This document shows, piece after piece, positions 1 to 15,736 of a stretch of DNA of 16,062 bases. This stretch comes from Macrostomum lignano (Eukaryota). The position numbers were made by a program, and so were the translations under genes. Under the pieces are notes generated by a model that was given only the letters and a program-made list of their open reading frames with translations, did not search any database and was not told the DNA's origin. Position 1 is the stretch's first letter; each line of letters begins with the position of its first letter. The DNA is taken from positions 1 through 16,062 of the forward strand of contig NIVC01001074.1 of NCBI GenBank assembly GCA_002269645.1. Direction: 5' to 3'.

Positions 1-175
1 CCCAGGTTAGATTCCGTGCTCGACCTCGATTACTTCATTAATTTTGAACTTGTCGAATGATTTATACCCATGAGGCCAACCCCATTGTAAGACAGTCAGA
101 ACATCCTGCGTGGGCATACATGGCATTACTGCCTTGACCTTCGAATGAGCCTGAGACACTCTACTCGTATTTCAG

Positions 176-319
176 ACGGTTACACAACCCATCAGCTCTT
201 GTTCGAATGGGTGGCTAAGATTGACGAGAGGGTCGAGTTCAGCGATGACTTAGAACTGCCCGAGTTTGTCACGCCCCCAAATATCAGTACGGAGACTTGC
301 GTTGTGAAATATCTCACTG
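176..319 (+). CDS. Cys-loop anion channel subunit (GlyR/GluCl-like), internal exon A: extracellular domain up to loop C. Upstream exons lie outside the window or were not recognised.
   Basis: Acceptor tttcAG (174-175) and donor GTgagt (320). 144 nt, phase 1/1. Translation xGYTTHQLLFEW...LELPEF...CVVKYLTG parallels GlyR FGYTMNDLIFEW...LTLPQF...CTKHYNTG. Confidence 0.9.
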
Positions 320-4834: not shown

Positions 4835-5163
4835 AGAGGAGAGGAGAGGAGAGGAGAGGAGAGGAGAGGAGAGGAGAGGAGAGGAGAGGAGAGGAGAGGA
4901 GAGGAGAGGAGAGGAGAGGAGAGGAGAGGAGAGGAGAGGAGAGGAGAGGAGAGGAGAGGAGAGGAGAGGAGAGGAGAGGAGAGAGAGGAGGAGAGGAGAG
5001 GAGAGGAGAGGAGAGGAGAGAGAGGAGAGGAGAGGAGAGGAGAGGAGAGGAGAGGAGAGGAGAGAGGAGAGGAGAGGAGAGGAGAGGAGAGGAGAGGAGA
5101 GGAGAGAGGAGAGGAGAGGAGAGGAGAGGAGAGGAGAGGAGAGGAGAGGAGAGGAGAGGAGAG
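4835..5163. repeat. (AGAGG)n pentanucleotide microsatellite, ~329-bp pure purine tract in intron 4529-5220
   Basis: Read directly. Occasional shortened units between about 4980 and 5110. Confidence 0.98.
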
Positions 5164-5220: not shown

Positions 5221-5580
5221 AACCGCTCTCAGGCCATCCCGATGATGACTTTCATGAACCGAGAGGCGGACGCTGCTACCGGGAGCTGCGAGACGGATAC
5301 CCTTATTAATAATTCTCGAAGCGTCGGTGCTGGCGCGGCTGGCGCCACCTCGGGTGATGGCGGCGGTGGGATCGGCGGCCTGCGCAGACGGGTCGCCTTC
5401 CAGTCTGTCGGTAGTGGCGACTCCGACAGTCCATTCGGTGGGAGCCACGGCAGCCTGCAGGAGGAGGAGTTCGTTAGCAGCGCTGAGATGATCGACAGGA
5501 TCTCGAGAGCTGCGTTTCCTCTGTCGTTCGGCATGTTTAACCTGGGTTATTGGGTGTACTATGTGTACATTGCTGAGTAA
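5221..5580 (+). CDS. Cys-loop anion channel terminal exon D (intracellular loop and M4, stop TAA)
   Basis: Acceptor ttttcAG (5219-5220), phase 0, in frame with ORF 5242-5580. Ends IDRISRAAFPLSFGMFNLGYWVYYVYIAE*, matching the M4 consensus IDxxSRxxFPxxFxxFNxxYW. Confidence 0.9.
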   Translation, partial: NRSQAIPMMTFMNREADAATGSCETDTLINNSRSVGAGAAGATSGDGGGGIGGLRRRVAFQSVGSGDSDSPFGGSHGSLQEEEFVSSAEMIDRISRAAFPLSFGMFNLGYWVYYVYIAE

Positions 5581-5780: not shown

Positions 5781-6106
5781 GGAGGATCCACTCTGATAGA
5801 ATGACAGGGTCCTGATGACCAACGAACACGTGAGCGTATGGGGAGGAGAGAGCAGTACGAGCTAGCATCTGGGGAGGAGAGAGCAGTACGAGCTAGCATC
5901 TGGGGAGGAGAGAGCAGTACGAGCTAGCATCTGGGGAGGAGAGAGCAGTACGAGCTAGCATCTGGGAGGAGAGAGCAGTACGAGCTAGCATCAGGGCAGG
6001 AGAGAGCCGGAGAGCCCATGGTCAGCAGCCGCTTGTCGTTAGTCTTGTCGGCGGAGGATCCACTCTGATAGAAGATCCGGGTCCTGACGACCAACGAGCA
6101 CGCGAG
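5781..6106. repeat. Pair of 54-bp imperfect direct repeats (5781-5834 and 6053-6106) bracketing a minisatellite
   Basis: The first 21 bp (GGAGGATCCACTCTGATAGAA) are identical; 7 mismatches over 54 bp. Confidence 0.9.
5840..6007. repeat. 31-bp minisatellite GGGGAGGAGAGAGCAGTACGAGCTAGCATCT, about 5.4 units
   Basis: Exact units at 5840, 5871, 5902 and 5933, a 30-bp unit at 5964 and a partial unit at 5994. Confidence 0.97.
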
Positions 6107-7798: not shown

Positions 7799-7864
7799 CT
7801 GCACCGCTACGCTGCTACGCTCGAATCGAAGACAAATACATCATTGAATAAAAAAGACTCGAAG

Positions 7865-10800
7865 ATGATCCTGACAGTTGGACAGCGTCTGCTGCCCCTG
7901 CTTCTCTTGCTGCTGATTCAGATTTCCCTAGCGCTCAGCTGCAATCCCCCCAACTCAACTTCAGACAGCAGAGTCACAATCTCTACCACTGGGGGCGGCT
8001 CAGGCAGCGTCTGCTATTTCCCATTTGCGGACGGCTCCAACACTTACAACGATTGCACCGAGTATTGCTCGAGCGGCCAGTGCCGCTTCTGGTGCGCGAC
8101 CTCCTGCGACTACGGCGCCAGCAGCACCCTGTGGCGATACTGCAACTATCGGCTGGCGAACCTGACGCAGGAAAACTGTTCCGGTCTGGCAACCGCGGCT
8201 CAGAGTTCCGAGCCGTCTGTACTCTACGCTGGCCTCGGCTCCGGGACCAAGTGTGTGTTCCCGTTTCTGTATAACGGCAAGTGTCACTATGACTGCCTGA
8301 CCACTACAACTGAGCCGTGGTGCGCCACCACTGCAGAGAGCGCTATCATCGATAACAACTTCAAATACTGCGCTTATACAATTTCTGGTGCGGCATCGCA
8401 GAGCTGCGCCCGGCTTAACGCATCAGAGCCGGCCTACATCACGCCGCAGCTGAGCAGCTATTCCGTCATATACACCCAGGCTGATCCTTATGCTAACTGT
8501 ACTTTTCCATTCTACTATAATGGAAAGTGTTACGACGACTGCACCAGTGGGGCCGGCTTTCCCTGGTACCTGATCTGGTGCAGTACAGAGCGCTACTACC
8601 AGCCCAATAAGCGCATCCGATTCTGCCCCTACTACAGAAGCTACGTTGGCATCAAGACACTCGCGCTACGTTGGGGCTTTTACAGGATCTACCTGCAGAC
8701 TGGCTGCGGCAGCGGCGGAAGTTTTTGTAACGCTAGCATTGCCGCGGCGAATTCCACAGCTCCACTGGCAGCTTACGGTTCGCGACGACTGGCTCTGACC
8801 GCTCCAAGCACCGAAGCCGCAGTCATGTGGGAGGCCATGCCTCAGCCTAACGGTTTCTTCATCTTCAGAAGCGTTGTGCCATGCTACACCCCGGCTGACG
8901 CTTGGTCCTCCGATGTTGCAGACGCCACTTTTGAGAACATAACAAAAGAACGCGAATTTTGGATTGTTGACTCAGCCGGTGGCAGTGGCGGCAGTGGACT
9001 GTACACAATAAAATCTTCGTTCAACGATACTGCCGGATACTTCCTGGCGCCAAGCACTGTCAGCGGCTACTCTGTGCTCACTCTGCAATCAAGCACTCCT
9101 ACTGTATGGCTATTCGAAGAGATCTCCGATCTGGAGAAGTCCAATTTGAACGTATGCGACCAGCTAGACATCAACGGCGGCTGGTGCAACTGGACCGACT
9201 GGAGTACAGTGAGCAGCGAGTGGCAGATGCGCGAACGGAACTGTAGCTGTCCGAGCGTTGCTGGCAACGGCACAACATGCGAGGGAAACAGCACCGAATG
9301 GCGGGCAGTAGTCAACGGGACTTGGTGCCCGTGGTCTGCCTACGCACCGGCAGGCGGAGGTTTTGCCACCCGGACTCGCGCCTGCGCTTGCCCGGCACCG
9401 GCAAACAGCGGATTGGACTGTCCTGGCAGCGGAAATGACACGGGTTTGGTAACAAATGGTAGCTGGTGCGGATGGAGCGCCTTCTCCATGGCTTCAGGCG
9501 TCGGCACTAGGACACGTCAGTGCAACTGCAGCGCTCCAGCGTATGGCGGTACAGACTGCCTTGGGTCTGCCATCGACTCAGGAGCTGTCGTTAACGGCAG
9601 CTGGTGCGGTTGGAGCCCGTTCTCTGTGATTTCTGGAGTTGGAACTAGAACGCGACAGTGCAACTGCAGCGCTCCGGCGTACGGCGGCAACGACTGCGTC
9701 GGCTCCGCTAGCGATTCCGGTACGGCAGTGAACGGCACCTGGTGCGATTGGGGTGCATTCGCAGTGTCCAGCGGCATCGGGACTAGAACTCGTCAGTGCA
9801 ACTGTAGCTCACCATCGTACGGCGGAGTTGATTGTCCCGGTTCTGGCACTGACTCTGGTACGGTCGTTAATGGTACCTGGTGCGGATGGAGCGCCTATTC
9901 AGTGACAGGAGGGGTTGGAACAAGAACACGACAATGCAACTGCAGCAAACCAGCGTACGGCGGTGTCGACTGTGCAGGACCAGCAACCGACTCTGGCACA
10001 GTCATCAATGGCAGCTGGTGTGGCTGGAGTGCCTTCTCTGTGGCTGGTGGCGTCGGGACGAGAACGCGTCAGTGCAACTGCAGTGCAGCTGAGTACGGCG
10101 GCGTGGACTGTGTTGGTTCGGCAACCGAATCGGGCTCCGCAGTGGACGGCAGCTGGTGCGCATGGAGCGCTTATCAAGTCAACGGGGAGTTTAGCAACCG
10201 TTCGCGACTTTGCAACTGCTCAGCGCCCGCGTTCGGCGGCCAACCCTGTCCAGGCAATGCTAGTGAGACTCAGAGGGTAGTTAACGGCACCTGGTGTCCA
10301 TGGGGACCCTACATAGTGTCTGGCGCTAATAGTACCAGAGCGAGAAGTTGCAACTGCTCCGCCCCGGCATACGGCGGTGCCGACTGCATCGGAGCTGCCA
10401 ATGAGACTCAGGTGGTGATTAATGGTAGTTGGTGTGCCTGGAGTAGCTACACCCTGTCACCTGGAGGAGACTACGGTACACGAACTCGGGCGTGCAACTG
10501 TCCGGCTGTGGCCTTCGGGGCACCGACTGTCCGGAAGTGGAAACGACACCGGATTGAAGCAGGACGCAGCCTGGTGCGCCTGGTCCAGCTACATTGTCGA
10601 CCCTGCCACCGGCGTTGGCACGCGGAACCGCAGCTGCGCCTGTCCTGCTGTGCCAGCCCACGGAGGCTCAGCTGTCTGCTCGGGAAACTCGACCGAGTCT
10701 GGCCTCTCTATAAACGCGACCTGGTGCGCCTGGTCCGCCTACGCAGCCGACGGGTCTGGCAACGAGACCCGACAGCGAAACTGCAGCTGTCCGACTGGCG

Positions 10801-11551
10801 GCGACTTTGGAGGTTCAACTGTCTGCCCCGGCTCGGCTGTGGACACGCGCCAGATTGTCAACGGTAGCTGGTGCGCCTGGAGCAACTACACCGTCGAAGG
10901 CGGCTGGGGCGTCCGGAATCGAACCTGCGAGTGCCCACCGCGTCAGTACTGGGAGAGACGTGTCAAGGTAACACGACAGATTGGCTGGCTCAGGTAAATG
11001 GCAGTTGGTGCGCCTGGTCTGAACTCGTATACACCTATGGTGCGGTGTCGCGCACCCGACAGTGCAACTGTTCCGCACCCAATGACATCGGAGTCGCCTG
11101 CTCGGGCGTCTCAGTCGAGCACTATCCGTGCAATGCAACCGCCTGCGCCACCACGACCCCAGCGTCCACCACCGGCGCTGCATCAACGAGTTCTGCTCCA
11201 GCAGCCTGGTGTCCTTGGGGCAATTTCACAGCCGGGCCGTTCAACAGCGGCTTCATGTACCGCCAGCGCCTGTGCAACTGTCCAGCTCCGTCAGCCGCCG
11301 AATCAGTCACGTGTCCGGGAAGCGGTCTGGAGAACGTCACCTGCCGCATAGCTGGCTGCGAGCGCATCATTGCAATACTCAAAAGCAAAGGCGCTGCTGG
11401 CGCAGACATCAGCCAGTTGTCCAGCTTCCGCAAGCTCGTCGGCCTCGGCGCTGTCGTGTGCTCGGCCGCCGCGCTGTCGCTGGCCATCGGTGCTGTTCTC
11501 ACGCTGTGCAAAGCGGCCGGCAGCGGGACCGGCGCCACCGCGCCAGCCTGA
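7865..11551 (+). CDS. Intronless type I membrane glycoprotein: signal peptide, 3 FN2-like domains, possible beta-trefoil, 15 TSR-like repeats, TM. About 1229 aa after repairing three single-base deletions.
   Basis: ATG 7865 (aagATG; the track's TTG start at 7844 is unlikely). Signal peptide MILTVGQRLLPLLLLLLIQISLA. CxFPF...WC...C domains at 8012-8143, 8252-8371 and 8498-8626. WCxW...RxRxCxC repeats at 9173-11359. Hydrophobic LVGLGAVVCSAAALSLAIGAVLTLC at 11435-11509. Adding G at 10517-20, G at 10533-34 and C at 10934-36 joins ORFs 7844, 10422 and 10871 and restores the repeat consensus. Confidence 0.85.
9173..11359 (+). repeat. Coding tandem array of 15 TSR-like units; exact 138-nt period from 9455 to 10421
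   Basis: Unit starts at 9455, 9593, 9731, 9869, 10007, 10145, 10283 and 10421 are each 138 nt apart. Confidence 0.92.
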
Positions 11552-12113
11552 GGCCTTGGCGCCATTTTTGACCAAACCAATAAGAACGATAAAAACTGTG
11601 AACAAGTCTGACGATCGAAATTTTATTACGCAACACTCTGATTGAGTTGCATTGCTCACATTAGAAAAGCAAGTACGTACATCCTTGAGTTTTCAAAATA
11701 TCTCATTTTGTCGGTTTCTCTTTTAAAATATTATTTTTTCCTAAAACATCTCAAGAAAACAAAAAATTAATTTAAGACCTACCTCAGACTACTGTCTACT
11801 GTAAGTAACAGGGGTGAATATACATTTAGAAAAGCACATTTTTGCTACATCTTTTTTTATAGTTGGAAGATCTTTGTGTAAATCAATGCGCCTTCTGTAT
11901 CTCTATTTTATCTATTCAAGTTTTTAAGCTATTTTAGGAGGCAGATTCAGCGAAGAAAGACAATAAGGAGACCTGAGGTTTGCATTTTTTCTGCATCAAA
12001 ATTGTTTTTACCTTTGATAGGAGGCAGACCCTATGTCCATATTTTGATATGACTTGCCTTTCTGATGGCTCTGCTGATAATCATAAAGCTTTTTGTTTAG
12101 AAAACTAAGATTC

Positions 12114-13565
12114 TTAACAGTAGAAAGACCATGGGGTGTATTTCAAATACACACATTCTTTCTTTTGTCTGGATCTCCAAAAATATTAAACCAATTGCCA
12201 TGAAAATCCAGAACACGGGCTAAAATTTTCTGCTCTATTCGATGAAGCAACTTCGAGAATCACGAAAAATCGGCATCGTCGAGATATTCAACGATTTTCC
12301 ACGGGGTGTCTGGTGGCAAAATCCACCAACATTGGCAAAATTTTTCTGCTCACAAAATCTCATCATGAAACCACGTCGACTCAACAAACTATGCATATCA
12401 GTCGTAGAGGCCTTTCTTCTCAGCATCCCAGACACCAGGGTCCCATTCAACACCGTCTGGAGCATCGGCGGCGACCGTCGGACCTTCAACAAAAGCACCC
12501 GATCGGAATTTCAGAGACGGTTGCGTTCCCAAACTGAAATGGAAGAATCCTCTTCTGCATGCAGCATTCCGTCAGTAGACACAATCGGTGAAAGATATGG
12601 ACGATGGCGACCCTCTAGACTGACCTGTAGACATACAAGCGACCTTCGGGTCGTTCAACGGAGTGCCACCACGCTGCCCTGACGAGCTGGCACCCCCAAC
12701 ATCGTGGTCTGTAACTCTTCAACTTAATATGGTGCAAAAGCATTGTATAATATGCAAACATATCTGGTTTGGTGCCTTGATAGAAAAATCACGATGTTTG
12801 GGGTGCCAGCGCGTCAGGTCCGCGTGGTGGCACTCCGTTGAAGGTCCCGAAGGTCGTCCGGATAGAGCTGAATGGTGAAAATGATGCAGGACCATTGTAT
12901 AATATGCAGATATGCAGACATGCCTGGTTTGGTGCCTTGATAAAAAAGCAGGATGTTGGCATTGACGGTGTCAGCTCGTCGGGGCCGCGTGGTGGCACTC
13001 CGTTGAACGACCCGAAGGTCGCTTGTATGTCTACAGGTCAGTCTAGAGGGTCGCTATCGTCCATTTCATTCACCGATTATCTCTATTGACGGAATGCTGC
13101 ATGCAAAAGAGGATTCTTCAATTTCAGTTTTGGGAACGCAGCCGTCTCTGAGATGCCGATCGGGTGCTTTTGTTGAAGGTCTCGACGGTCGCCGCCGATG
13201 CTCCAGACGGTGATGAAGGGGACCCTGATGCCTGGAATTCTGAGAACAAAGGCGTCTACGACAGATAGACCCAGATTATTGAGCCAATATGGATTCACCA
13301 TAAAGGTTTATACAGTGTAGTGTTGGTTGTCCTTGCCACCAGTGTCTTCGACAAGAATCGTTGAATATCTCGACGATGCCGACGTCGGATGACATTGAAA
13401 GTTAGTTAGTCAGAAAGGGCGGAAAATTTTGATAAATATGACGGACTTTTGCGAAAATCGGTAATTCGGTTTGCGAGCTATCGTGAAATGGGTTGTGTGC
13501 ATTTTTAATACACCCCCCGTGGTCTTTCCCCAGGGGGAAAAATAGCGTGGTCTTTCTACTGTTAA
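12114..13565. mobile_element. TTAA-flanked non-autonomous fold-back DNA transposon (piggyBac-like ends), 1444 bp between the TTAA sites
   Basis: TTAA (12114-17) + CAGTAGAAAGACCA (12118-31) ... TGGTCTTTCTACTG (13548-61) + TTAA (13562-65). Internal inverted arms: 12270-12296/13356-13382 (27 bp perfect) and 12397-12694/12967-13266 (about 92% by manual alignment, with a 68-bp perfect core). Confidence 0.8.
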
Positions 13566-14729: not shown

Positions 14730-15512
14730 ATGACGGAGTCTCGCGCCCTGACTCGCAAGCAGAGCGTCATCATCGGTTTGTGCGCTCTGTGCCTGACCTT
14801 CGTCTTGCTGATGACAGCTGGTCAGACCGGCTCCGTCAGAGGGGTCGCAAACTGAGTCAGGAAATTGCCTGGCTGCCGTTCCGGCTCGTCAATAGCTACA
14901 GCGGTGGTGATTTTAACGATACAAATCGTCGAGACAACTCGTGGAGGAAGAATCTTCGACCGACGACCTCAACAGGGCTCCGATTTGATCCCTTCAACGA
15001 ATTGGCCGCTATGCTGGTGCCGAGCTCAAAGTCAGGCAACTCGACTGGTTGGAAGCGATTCCAGATGGTCTACCCGCAGCTTTACCGACATCTCACCAAG
15101 CTGACCGAATCGCCAGCCGCGGTTGCTCCAAATCTTCTAAACGCGCCAAACAACACCGCAAAGAATCTGTCTGCCTGCCGCCGTCCGCCAGACAAGAACC
15201 TGGCCCACCTGTTGAACCAGCCGACTCCAGCTTTCCGTTTGCTCGACCGACTTACCGAGGCGGCTTCTGGTCGCCCAGGAGCTGCTGGCCGCCGCTGTCG
15301 AAAACCGCCGTCCTGGTGCCGTACCGGAACCGAAGCGAGAATCTCGACAAGTTCGTGCCCTATATGCAGACCCTGCTGCAGCAGCAGAACATCGCCTACG
15401 GCATCTTCGTGATTGAGCAGGCGAATACGAAGCTGTTCAACCGCGCCAAACTGCTCAACGTTGGCTTCCGAGTGGCCAACAGTTTGCCAAGTTTGACTGC
15501 TTCGTGCTGCAC
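14730..15512 (+). CDS. GT7 family beta-1,4-galactosyltransferase / beta-1,4-GalNAc-transferase-like, first coding exon; the gene continues beyond the window
   Basis: Type II anchor MTESRALTRKQSVIIGLCALCLTFVLLMTAG, a long stem, then GGFWSPRSC..KTAVLVPYRNR, YGIFVIEQ, FNRAKLLNVGF and FDCFVLH followed by donor GTaagt (15513), just before the expected DVD motif. Needs three +1 repairs (about 14841-44, about 15252-53, about 15487-90). Confidence 0.88.
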
Positions 15513-15736
15513 GTAAGTAGATCTTTATGAATCCGTGGCTTCGTATCATTCTAGTTAATTAGCTCGTAAGGAGGGCTTTTTGGACACTGCAAAAATCACA
15601 AAGTCAAAACCAGAATGTGCTTTGTTTTGTACTTGTCTACAGTAGGCCTAACATCTAAATGACCCAAGTGGAAGGGGTTTTTATTGACTATTTGAAAATG
15701 CATGCATGTGAAAAATAATCGTCAAGATGCTTGAAC

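What the first reader, a model, noticed from the sequence alone, without database searches (positions are those of the whole stretch)
7865..11551. Candidate undescribed cell-surface receptor or adhesion protein: FN2x3, beta-trefoil-like domain, TSRx15, TM
I do not recognise this domain order from any named family. FN2 domains typically bind collagen/gelatin or lipids. The 15 repeats would form a long, heavily glycosylated stalk holding that head away from the membrane, and the tail is only about 13 aa, which suggests adhesion, capture or lectin-like function rather than signalling. The architecture is read from sequence; novelty and function are inference.
Basis: partly seen in the sequence, partly recalled or inferred. 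Interest (0 to 1): 0.75.

Follow-up and report, generated by a model that had tools for sequence, protein, structure and literature searches.

The report
Flatworm FN2–thrombospondin-repeat surface glycoprotein gene
A single-exon Macrostomum (flatworm) gene encodes a membrane-anchored, heavily glycosylated surface protein with three collagen-binding-type FN2 modules, an orphan domain and fifteen shortened thrombospondin repeats. The layout is real and unstudied, but it is built mostly from familiar parts and already has two uncharacterised sister genes in public M. lignano annotations.

Summary
Window 7865-11551 (+) is one intronless coding region broken by three 1-bp deletions in G-runs. Repaired, it gives a 1229-aa type I membrane protein:
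- a signal peptide;
- 3 FN2 modules (Pfam E 7e-11);
- a 178-aa orphan domain;
- 15 thrombospondin type-1 repeats (profile vs PDB TSP-1, E 1e-19; AF2 pLDDT 85; Foldseek hits properdin and TSP-1);
- one TM helix and a 13-aa tail.

The 'beta-trefoil' reading of the middle domain could not be supported. Pfam, PDB sequences, 1.84 billion representative proteins, self-comparison and AF2 (pLDDT 39) all gave nothing.

Neighbouring exons are 98-100% identical to Macrostomum lignano proteins. The gene is an unannotated third paralogue (46% identity) of two M. lignano 'hypothetical' gene groups, Mlig009063 and Mlig014498, which share the architecture. No paper mentions those gene or protein IDs.

The neighbouring B4GALT exon carries two more 1-bp deletions (one in a C-run), so the frame breaks are most likely assembly errors.

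Repeats 1-13 are a shortened 4-Cys TSR variant with re-wired cysteines.

The most likely function (inferred) is a non-signalling matrix-binding adhesion or capture receptor on a long glycosylated stalk. It is a new variant of a known kind, of moderate interest.

The parts
7865..11551 (+). Whole single-exon coding region (1229 codons plus stop after restoring three missing bases). As assembled it reads as ORFs 7844-10867 and 10871-11551, with a third frame in between.
7865..7936 (+). Signal peptide (aa 1-24, MILTVGQRLLPLLLLLLIQISLAL)
   Evidence: One of only two Kyte-Doolittle hydrophobic segments. In-frame stops lie upstream. No signal-peptide predictor was available.
8012..8143 (+). FN2 module 1 (aa 50-93). 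It has an inserted Cys-rich loop, giving 8 conserved Cys when upstream C26 is counted.
   Evidence: Pfam fn2 model positions 1-42/42 matched, 20.0 bits alone, just under the 22.2 cutoff. The Cys are invariant in the paralogues. It aligns to a vertebrate FN2.
8252..8371 (+). FN2 module 2 (aa 130-169). It has 6 conserved Cys when linker C105 and the extra C140 are counted.
   Evidence: Pfam fn2 40.9 bits, E 2e-10
8498..8626 (+). FN2 module 3 (aa 212-254). It has 6 conserved Cys when linker C181 and the extra C222 are counted.
   Evidence: Pfam fn2 34.3 bits, E 2.4e-8
8633..9166 (+). Orphan middle domain (aa 257-434) with 4 conserved Cys. AF2 predicts it as strand-rich, but at low confidence. The fold is unknown.
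   Evidence: It is 41-43% identical to the same region of P0001 and P0002. There is no Pfam hit at E<=10 for this sequence and no PDB sequence hit at E<=10. Only P0001 and P0002 match among 1.84 billion representatives. AF2 pLDDT is 38.6 and Foldseek finds nothing.
9167..11371 (+). Array of 15 thrombospondin type-1 repeats (aa 435-1170). Repeats 1-13 are 46-50-aa 4-Cys 'mini-TSRs'. Repeats 14 and 15 keep the C-terminal CxxxxC pair.
   Evidence: TSP-1 E 1.4e-19; TSP_1 31 bits; AF2 pLDDT 84.8; Foldseek properdin/TSP-1, E 2e-6 to 1e-5; 138-bp period, about 70% DNA identity
10517..10520 (+). Frame break 1: the GGGG run lacks one G (in repeat 10; expected ...AFGGTDCP...)
10533..10534 (+). Frame break 2: the GG run lacks one G (expected ...DCPGSGNDTG...)
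10951..10953 (+). Frame break 3: the GGG run lacks one G (in repeat 13; expected ...QYWGETCQG...). It returns translation to the original frame.
11147..11206 (+). Thr/Ser/Ala/Pro-rich mucin-like linker between repeats 14 and 15 (aa 1096-1115)
   Evidence: Read directly from the sequence
11435..11509 (+). Transmembrane helix (aa 1192-1216, LVGLGAVVCSAAALSLAIGAVLTLC)
   Evidence: The only internal hydrophobic segment. Equivalent segments occur in the paralogues.
11510..11551 (+). 13-aa cytoplasmic tail KAAGSGTGATAPA plus the TGA stop
   Evidence: The tails of the paralogues are short (about 10 and about 41 aa) and not conserved.

Best explanation
**What it is (shown).** This is an unannotated third paralogue of a gene family so far seen only in Macrostomum. 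It sits in M. lignano (or a near-identical relative) between a Cys-loop chloride-channel gene and a B4GALT-like gene. It encodes a type I membrane glycoprotein made of:
- a signal peptide;
- three FN2 modules, each tethered by an extra conserved cysteine pair;
- a 178-aa orphan domain;
- 15 thrombospondin type-1 repeats;
- one TM helix;
- a 13-aa tail.

**State of the gene (inferred, about 0.75).** The three frame breaks are homopolymer deletion errors of the assembly, and the gene is intact in the animal.

**How it most likely works (inferred, about 0.4-0.5).** It is a non-signalling adhesion or capture receptor.
- The FN2 triple, a module type that binds collagen/gelatin in MMP-2/9 and fibronectin and phosphorylcholine lipids in BSP/ELSPBP1 proteins, forms the ligand-binding head together with the orphan domain.
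- The 15 TSRs form a semi-rigid, N-glycosylated and probably C-mannosylated stalk that holds the head away from the membrane. At roughly 4-5 nm per repeat, it could span some tens of nm.
- The short, unconserved tail only anchors the protein.

**The repeats (partly shown, partly inferred).** The repeats are a re-wired TSR.
- The CSxTCG loop carrying C1 and C2 is deleted.
- C5 and C6 are lost in repeats 1-13.
- The C3-C4 pair is kept.
- A new pair is inferred to staple the N-terminus of strand A to the end of strand B: the Cys inside WCxW and the second Cys of CxC.

The single confidence figure given (0.5) is for the whole statement including the inferred function. The architecture and family assignment alone are about 0.95.
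For: **Architecture**
- Domain calls: 10, 11, 26-28, 43, 62, 72.
- TSR fold: AF2 gives pLDDT 84.8 for repeats 3-5. The best Foldseek PDB hits are properdin TSRs and TSP-1 TSR2-3 (E 2e-6 to 1e-5). Single-domain superpositions on complement C7/C8 TSRs give 2.5-3 Å over 46-49 columns.
- Cysteine re-wiring: the HMM alignment to 1LSL shows a 5-residue gap exactly at 'svtCg' and no C5/C6.

**Family**
- P0001 and P0002 are 46% identical with the same layout.
- They have 8-10 repeats and short tails.
- All 24 head cysteines are invariant across the three paralogues.

**Species**
- The B4GALT exon matches P0136 at 100% over 84 aa and exactly over the 49 aa before the frame break; only P0013 differs (K vs N).
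- The GABA-receptor exon is 98% identical.

**Assembly-error reading**
- All three breaks are 1-bp deletions in G-runs.
- The corrected frame has no stop in 1229 codons, and repeats 11-13, which lie between the breaks, keep every invariant residue.
- The neighbouring B4GALT exon shows two further 1-bp deletions relative to three annotated M. lignano proteins. One is CCC->CC.
- A paralogue shows the same kind of garbling in one annotation (P0001) but not in another (P0132/P0133).

**Non-signalling tail**
- The tail is 13 aa of G/A/S/T/P with no known motif, and tails are not conserved between paralogues.

**Glycosylated stalk**
- There are 39 N-x-S/T sequons in the array, two of them conserved per repeat (NG[ST]W and CNCS).
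- There are 16 WxxW C-mannosylation motifs.
- The O-fucosylation motif CxxS/TCxxG is absent from the repeats.
Against: - No expression, localisation or binding data exist for any family member. No paper mentions the gene or protein IDs.
- No copy of this gene is in the protein databases, even truncated. It may be silent, or a real pseudogene.
- M. lignano is a neopolyploid with about three copies of most loci (PMC10733133). Decay of one copy is therefore plausible and cannot be separated from assembly error without reads.
- FN2 ligand specificity cannot be read from sequence, and the extra disulfides and long linkers differ from vertebrate FN2 arrays.
- The TSR array is mildly acidic (pI 5.1), so the heparin-type binding of some TSRs is not implied.
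- The fold of the middle domain is unknown.
- The disulfide pairing in the mini-TSR is inferred from alignment and strand geometry. It was not read from coordinates.
Confidence: 0.5

Rival explanations
1. It is a recently inactivated copy: a decaying homeologue or paralogue in the neopolyploid M. lignano genome. The three deletions are real. As written, the product would be a 1000-aa secreted protein ending in about 115 aa of out-of-frame sequence, or nothing at all.
For: - As assembled, frame 2 ends at a stop at 10865-10867, before the third deletion restores the frame.
- No matching protein or gene call exists in the databases.
- About 70% of the assembly is in three-copy blocks, and some duplicates have been lost or altered by rediploidisation (PMC10733133).
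- The neighbouring B4GALT exon is also frame-broken, as expected if a whole segment were decaying.
Against: - All five frame-breaking differences in the window are 1-bp deletions, four of them clearly in homopolymer runs. There are no insertions, no nonsense mutations and no loss of invariant residues. This is the typical signature of long-read consensus error.
- Apart from the two deletions and the residues beside them, the B4GALT exon matches the annotated proteins P0136/P0137 exactly.
- A paralogue shows the same artefact in one annotation only.
Confidence: 0.22
2. It is a glycan- or gamete-recognition receptor rather than a matrix adhesin. The orphan domain would be a lectin-like (possibly beta-trefoil) module. 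The protein would be a functional analogue of the mannose-receptor family (ricin-type CysR + FN2 + repeat stalk + TM), or of sperm-coating FN2 proteins (BSP/ELSPBP1), for example on sperm, in the female antrum, or in innate immunity.
For: - The best cross-phylum sequence hits of the head are reptile epididymal sperm-binding protein 1-like FN2 proteins (E 1e-21).
- The middle domain shows W-containing hairpin motifs at 44- and 49-aa spacing (MWEAM, EFWIV, VWLFE), two of them invariant.
- The paralogues are diverged (41-46% identity) and differ in repeat number (8, 8-10 and 15), as is common for recognition proteins.
- PLA2R1 and MRC1 share the head-on-stalk logic (PMC7524879).
Against: - The beta-trefoil was not detected by Pfam, PDB sequences, self-comparison (hhalign E 0.24) or AF2/Foldseek.
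- The first 'QxW-like' Trp is not conserved.
- The tail has no endocytic motif.
- There are no expression data.
- The ELSPBP1 similarity covers the generic FN2 modules only.
Confidence: 0.2
3. It is mainly a structural glycocalyx or matrix component, perhaps shed from the membrane. The TSR array would be the functional part, as in secreted TSR-bearing adhesive proteins such as the flatworm glue protein Mlig-ap2, and the head would be accessory.
For: - TSRs occur in the M. lignano adhesive protein Mlig-ap2 (PMC6410801).
- The array makes up 60% of the protein and carries most of the glycosylation sites.
- A mucin-like linker and a basic juxtamembrane stretch precede the TM.
Against: - The head is at least as conserved as the stalk, with all its cysteines invariant, while stalk length varies from 8 to 15 repeats. 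This argues that the head carries the specific function.
- The TM segment is conserved in position in all paralogues.
- No cleavage site was identified.
Confidence: 0.08

Closest known systems
Macrostomum lignano hypothetical proteins BOX15_Mlig009063g1/g2 (PAA73206.1, PAA54962.1 = A0A267E2T2; also A0A1I8FYL0) and BOX15_Mlig014498g1-g3 (PAA56683.1, PAA55111.1 = A0A267GYT2)
   Same: - Same architecture and order: signal peptide, FN2x3 with the same extra cysteines, the same orphan domain, mini-TSR array, TM, short tail.
- 46% identity over the aligned 65-71% of the query.
- The Mlig014498 gene is also a single uninterrupted coding block.
   Different: - They have 8-10 repeats against 15 here.
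- Their tails are about 10 and about 41 aa against 13 aa.
- Mlig014498 lacks the two terminal 6-Cys repeats.
- None is characterised.
- The UniRef name 'Protein-tyrosine-phosphatase' for A0A1I8FYL0 has no Pfam support.
THSD7A / THSD7B (thrombospondin type-1 domain-containing 7)
   Same: Type I membrane protein whose ectodomain is essentially a long TSR array (21 TSDs) (PMC7524879). The single TM and short tail are from my own knowledge. It works like a stalk-type adhesion protein.
   Different: - It has no FN2 head and no orphan domain.
- Its TSRs are full-size 6-Cys domains of alternating TSP-1 and C6 type.
- No sequence relationship beyond the generic TSR was seen: it is absent from the hits.
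Mannose receptor family (MRC1, PLA2R1, MRC2/Endo180, LY75)
   Same: A ligand-binding head that includes an FN2 module, carried on a long array of repeated domains, with a single TM (PMC7524879). In Endo180 the FN2 binds collagen (my own knowledge).
   Different: - The stalk there is made of C-type lectin-like domains, not TSRs.
- There is one FN2, not three.
- The ricin-type CysR domain is N-terminal to the FN2. Here the unassigned domain follows the FN2s and is not demonstrably a trefoil.
- Those tails carry endocytic motifs, which are absent here.
Tandem-FN2 proteins: MMP-2/MMP-9 collagen-binding domain, BSP/ELSPBP1 seminal proteins
   Same: Three consecutive FN2 modules with the canonical four Cys and the aromatic FPF/WC core. 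They align collinearly at E 1e-20 to 1e-21.
   Different: - The linkers here are 35-40 aa, each with an extra conserved Cys that probably pairs with an extra Cys inside the module (GKCxxDC).
- Module 1 has an inserted Cys-rich loop.
- Here the modules are membrane-anchored through TSRs rather than part of a protease or a small secreted protein.
Canonical thrombospondin type-1 repeat (TSP-1 TSR2/3, properdin, UNC5, complement C6-C9)
   Same: WxxW and RxR layers, the C3-C4 pair (RxRxC...GGxxC) and the three-strand fold.
   Different: - Repeats 1-13 are 46-50 aa against about 55-60.
- They lack the CSxTCG loop (C1, C2) and also C5 and C6.
- They carry a new Cys inside WCxW and a CxC doublet.
- They have no O-fucosylation motif and two conserved N-glycan sequons per repeat.

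Membership tests
Fibronectin type II domain (Pfam PF00040) | Profile match at or above Pfam's gathering score | tested here: met
   The whole protein scores 42.3 bits against 22.2. Module 2 scores 40.9 and module 3 scores 34.3. Module 1 scores 20.0, just under the cutoff, but matches the full model (1-42/42).
Fibronectin type II domain (Pfam PF00040) | Four canonical cysteines plus the aromatic core (C-x-FPF ... Y..C ... WC ... C) | tested here: met
   Present in all three modules, invariant in the paralogues, and aligned to vertebrate FN2s. The extra cysteines are additional and do not replace the canonical ones.
Fibronectin type II domain (Pfam PF00040) | Collagen/gelatin or phosphorylcholine binding | not testable with these tools
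   Needs a binding assay.
Thrombospondin type-1 repeat (Pfam PF00090 / TSR superfamily) | Profile match | tested here: met
   TSP_1 scores 21.9 bits against 21.6 on the whole protein and 31 bits on repeats 3-5. A profile of the 15 repeats hits TSP-1 (1LSL) at E 1.4e-19, and also UNC5, C6-C9 and properdin.
Thrombospondin type-1 repeat (Pfam PF00090 / TSR superfamily) | WxxW and RxR motifs forming the Trp-Arg ladder | tested here: met
   W6, W9, R22 and R24 are invariant in all 15 repeats. The third Trp is replaced by Tyr or Phe.
Thrombospondin type-1 repeat (Pfam PF00090 / TSR superfamily) | Six cysteines forming three disulfides (C1-C5, C2-C6, C3-C4) | tested here: not met
   Repeats 1-13 have 4 Cys. 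C1 and C2 are deleted with their loop, C5 and C6 are absent, C3 and C4 are kept, and two new Cys appear. Repeats 14 and 15 regain the CxxxxC pair but still lack C1 and C2. This is a structural variant of the domain, not the canonical form.
Thrombospondin type-1 repeat (Pfam PF00090 / TSR superfamily) | Elongated three-strand fold | tested here: met
   AF2 pLDDT is 84.8. Foldseek against PDB puts properdin and TSP-1 TSRs on top at probability 1.00. This is a prediction, not an experimental structure.
   There is no Pfam hit at E<=10 for this sequence; a paralogue gave only a sub-threshold glycoside-hydrolase hit. There is no PDB sequence hit at E<=10.
   The hhalign self-comparison gives an off-diagonal E of 0.24. 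Trp motifs lie at 44- and 49-aa spacing, but the first is not conserved. The alignment has only three sequences.
   The AF2 model has pLDDT 38.6, and Foldseek on it finds nothing at E<1. That model is too poor to decide.
Mannose receptor family | CysR - FN2 - multiple C-type lectin-like domains - TM - endocytic tail | tested here: not met
   There is no CTLD or ricin Pfam match, the order is different, and there is no Tyr or di-hydrophobic motif in the tail. The resemblance is in functional logic only.
THSD7A/B | Orthology, with about 21 alternating full-size TSRs | tested here: not met
   No THSD7 protein is among the significant hits. The repeats are the 4-Cys mini type, and an FN2 head is present.
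Macrostomum FN2-TSR membrane protein family (Mlig009063 / Mlig014498) | Collinear FN2x3 + orphan domain + mini-TSR array + TM, with conserved head cysteines | tested here: met
   E 2e-275 and 7e-226 at 46% identity. The orphan domain matches only these proteins among 1.84 billion representatives. All 24 head Cys are invariant.

The most novel reading that the evidence does not exclude
The family is a Macrostomum-specific invention with three novel elements.
1. The 178-aa orphan domain is a new ligand-binding fold.
2. The 4-Cys 'mini-TSR' is a new structural subclass of thrombospondin repeat, with a re-wired disulfide that allows unusually compact, rigid, N-glycan-coated stalks.
3. The protein is the cell-surface partner in a lineage-specific adhesion or recognition process. 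Examples would be anchoring in the duo-gland adhesive organ or sperm-female tract interaction, with stalk length (8 versus 15 repeats) tuning the reach.
Probability: 0.15. Interest if true: 0.55.

Novelty: new variant of a known kind. Interest (0 to 1): 0.33.

Why it matters
- **FN2 evolution.** If real and expressed, it adds a membrane-anchored, triple-FN2 protein to a phylum where FN2 modules were long thought absent. They are now known in turbellarian VALs and several planarian proteins (PMC3435950, PMC6211748). It is useful for working out how FN2 modules evolved and what they bind outside vertebrates.
- **TSR structure.** It documents a compact 4-Cys form of the thrombospondin repeat. This is of interest to structural biologists and to anyone annotating TSRs, because Pfam only just detects it.
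- **M. lignano biology.** It flags a gene that current annotations miss, probably because homopolymer errors break its frame. It also provides a testable candidate for cell-matrix or gamete adhesion.

It does not open a long-standing question.

Tried and rejected
- **Look-ups of encoding contigs.** The as-assembled 1000-aa product and P0001, P0013 and P0017 are not on record. I therefore could not fetch a second genomic copy to compare at the frame-break sites.
- **Middle domain.** Every test came back empty:
  - Pfam at E<=10;
  - PDB sequences with a profile at E<=10;
  - a profile search of 1.84 billion representatives, which gave only the two paralogues plus P0011, a repetitive protein (apparently bacterial) scoring by summing 14 weak stretches, rejected as spurious;
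  - hhalign self-comparison;
  - AF2 with a 3-sequence alignment, pLDDT 38.6;
  - Foldseek on that model, which gave only meaningless hits to pentameric ligand-gated channels at E>1.
- **Kringle instead of FN2.** Not listed by Pfam at E<=1.
- **'Protein-tyrosine-phosphatase' name of A0A1I8FYL0.** There is no phosphatase domain, so I treat the name as an annotation artefact. One member of its cluster is a 2735-aa fused model.
- **Introns as the cause of the frame changes.** Rejected, because the repeat consensus runs continuously across each junction with exactly one base missing.
- **Recent tandem duplication or assembly collapse of the repeats.** The DNA copies are only about 70% identical.
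- **Structured RNA.** Rfam finds none in the window.
- **Literature.** Searches for the gene or protein IDs, and for Macrostomum with 'fibronectin type II', found nothing on this family.

Full report

The window has a GC-rich block (52-63% GC against about 42-49% in the flanks). It coincides with a 1007-codon ORF at 7844-10867 and a 226-codon ORF at 10871-11551 on the + strand.

Three-frame translation shows one continuous protein. It starts at the ATG at 7865, with stops upstream in frame and a hydrophobic leader after it. It ends at the TGA at 11549-11551 and is interrupted by three frame changes. At each one the repeat consensus continues in another frame with exactly one base missing:
- the GGGG run at 10517-10520;
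- the GG run at 10533-10534;
- the GGG run at 10951-10953.

Adding one G at each site gives 1229 codons without a stop. Kyte-Doolittle analysis finds only two hydrophobic segments, aa 1-24 and aa 1192-1216.

**2. The domains**

*FN2.*
- Pfam fn2 scores 42.3 bits against a cutoff of 22.2, in three stretches.
- Scanned separately, modules 2 and 3 pass (40.9 and 34.3 bits). Module 1 is just under the cutoff (20.0 bits) but matches the full model.
- A database search with the head alone returns vertebrate tandem-FN2 proteins: ELSPBP1-like at E 1.4e-21, MMP-9 and a rotifer FN2 protein.
- BLASTP aligns the three modules collinearly with three FN2s of the Varanus protein at E 1e-20.
- Each module has cysteines beyond the canonical four. 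One lies in the 35-40-aa linker before it, and one sits inside (GKCxxDC). Module 1 also has an inserted Cys-rich loop. All are invariant in the paralogues.

*TSR array.*
- There are exactly 15 units beginning W-C-x-W, with W, C, W, R, R, C, C, C and G invariant.
- A profile of the 15 units hits TSP-1 TSRs at E 1.4e-19. It then hits UNC5, complement C6-C9, properdin, BAI1 (vasculostatin-120) and ADAMTS13.
- The HMM alignment shows a five-residue deletion exactly where canonical TSRs carry 'CSxTCG' (C1 and C2). Repeats 1-13 end before C5 and C6.
- The C3-C4 pair (RxRxC...GGxxC) is kept, and two new cysteines appear: WCxW and CxC.
- Strand A runs antiparallel to strand B. The new Cys next to the first Trp therefore lies near the end of strand B, where the CxC sits, so a new staple between them is geometrically plausible. 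This is inference.
- AF2 on repeats 3-5, with 17 repeat-triplets as the alignment, gives pLDDT 84.8. Foldseek against PDB ranks properdin and TSP-1 TSR2-3 first, at E 2e-6 to 1e-5.
- The array carries 39 of the 48 N-glycan sequons, two of them conserved per repeat. It has 16 WxxW C-mannosylation motifs and lacks the O-fucosylation motif.
- The DNA repeats are only about 70% identical, so the array is old.

- It is 41-43% identical to the same region of the two paralogues.
- It has no Pfam match at E<=10 and no PDB sequence match at E<=10.
- In a profile search of 1.84 billion representative proteins it finds only those two paralogues, plus a spurious repetitive protein that looks bacterial.
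- The hhalign self-comparison is not significant.
- AF2 gives pLDDT 38.6, strand-rich but unreliable. Foldseek on that model returns noise.
- There are W-containing hairpin motifs at trefoil-like spacing, but the first is not conserved.
- 'Beta-trefoil-like' is therefore an untested guess. The domain is a lineage-restricted orphan.

**3. Where the window comes from, and the family**

The window is animal DNA. Upstream lie exons of a Cys-loop (GABA/glycine-type) channel, and downstream a B4GALT-like exon.
- These exons are 98-100% identical to M. lignano proteins, including non-conserved stem sequence. The window is therefore M. lignano or a near-identical relative.
- The best matches to the target protein are M. 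lignano P0001 (A0A1I8FYL0) and P0002 (BOX15_Mlig014498g1) at only 46% identity.
- Their clusters contain the NCBI models Mlig009063 g1/g2 and Mlig014498 g1-g3. UniProt calls these 'hypothetical' or 'Fibronectin type-II domain-containing protein'.
- They have the same layout with 8-10 repeats and short, unrelated tails. Mlig014498g1 is also one uninterrupted coding block in assembly GCA_002269645.1.
- The window gene is thus a third, unannotated paralogue with the longest stalk.
- No paper mentions any of these genes.
- FN2 modules in flatworms have been noted before (PMC3435950; PMC6211748). TSRs occur in the M. lignano glue protein Mlig-ap2 (PMC6410801).

**4. Broken gene or broken assembly?**

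Several lines of evidence favour assembly error.
- All three breaks are 1-bp deletions in G-runs in the most GC-rich part of the gene.
- The corrected frame is stop-free, and the repeats lying between the breaks keep all invariant residues.
- The neighbouring B4GALT exon matches annotated M. lignano proteins P0136/P0137 except for two further 1-bp deletions. One is CCC->CC at about 15474-15477.
- A paralogue shows the same sort of garbled stretch in its TSR array in one annotation (P0001) but not in the NCBI models.

That makes five of five frame-breaking differences single-base deletions, four of them clearly in homopolymer runs. This is the classic long-read consensus error, so I put about 0.75 on assembly error.

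The rival is a decaying homeologue. M. lignano is a neopolyploid with about three copies of most loci (PMC10733133). That reading cannot be excluded without reads, and the gene's absence from protein sets is compatible with either.

**5. How it most likely works (inference from module biology)**

- The protein is a type I membrane glycoprotein. Its tail is 13 aa of G/A/S/T/P, has no known motif and is not conserved in the paralogues, so it is unlikely to signal by itself.
- The conserved, cysteine-rich head (FN2x3 plus the orphan domain) is the likely ligand-binding part. FN2 modules bind collagen/gelatin in MMP-2/9, fibronectin and Endo180, and bind phosphorylcholine lipids in BSP/ELSPBP1 proteins (established knowledge).
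- The TSR array is an elongated, glycan-coated spacer whose length varies between paralogues.
- My best reading is a matrix-binding adhesion or capture receptor.
- The rivals are a lectin or gamete-recognition receptor, analogous to the mannose-receptor family (PMC7524879), and a shed structural component.
- The array is mildly acidic (pI 5.1), so TSR-type heparin binding is not implied.

**6. Comparison with known proteins, and verdict**

- In function it most resembles THSD7A (a TSR stalk with a TM) and the mannose-receptor family (an FN2-containing head on a repeat stalk). It is a member of neither family, because defining features were tested and not met.
- It is a member of the uncharacterised Macrostomum FN2-TSR family.
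- Its modules belong to the FN2 and TSR superfamilies, the latter as a shortened 4-Cys variant that fails the canonical six-cysteine criterion.
- Novelty: a new variant of a known kind.
- The finding is real and tidy, and it exposes an annotation gap. However, lineage-specific shuffling of extracellular modules is common, and there are no functional data.
- Interest: about 0.33.

Noticed in passing
window 15080-15512 (+): A B4GALT-like exon ending at a GT donor (cac|gtaagt at 15513). It matches M. lignano proteins A0A1I8GGI4/A0A1I8IH22 except for two 1-bp deletions: near 15226-15230, and CCC->CC at about 15474-15477. This is the same error type as in the target gene.
   Followed up: yes
window 172-318, 520-684 and 5242-5580 (+): Exons of a Cys-loop ligand-gated (GABA/glycine-type) channel gene: the end of the ligand-binding domain, TM1-TM2, and a C-terminal TM4 exon ending at a stop at 5580. 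They are 98% identical to M. lignano A0A1I8HYA7 over 49 aa.
   Followed up: partly
window 4835-5163; 5839-6007; 1597-1647: An (AGAGG)n microsatellite of about 65 copies that creates long spurious ORFs on both strands (GEERR / SSPLL) and a strong GC/AT skew. There is also a 31-bp tandem repeat (5.5 copies) and a 10-bp tandem repeat (5 copies).
   Followed up: no
window 12222-13430: A large foldback (inverted-repeat) structure between the target gene and the B4GALT gene. It has nested arms of 53-172 nt that are 70-94% complementary. It may be a foldback or MITE-like element. The short ORFs on its two arms are mirror images.
   Followed up: no
P0001 (A0A1I8FYL0) aa ~780-805 vs P0132/P0133: The UniRef model of paralogue Mlig009063 reads 'AYTLPGGRLYRFQLPWQFTDSLTQ', where the NCBI models read an intact repeat 'AYTVTAGVGSRTRNCSCPAAAYTGSSCPGSSTDSLTQ'. 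It also has two extra repeats. Its name 'Protein-tyrosine-phosphatase' has no domain support, and one member of its cluster is a 2735-aa fused model.
   Followed up: partly
window 11552-12100: No canonical AATAAA or ATTAAA polyadenylation signal lies in the 560 nt after the stop codon; only an AATAAG about 35 nt downstream. The 3' end of the transcript is undefined.
   Followed up: no
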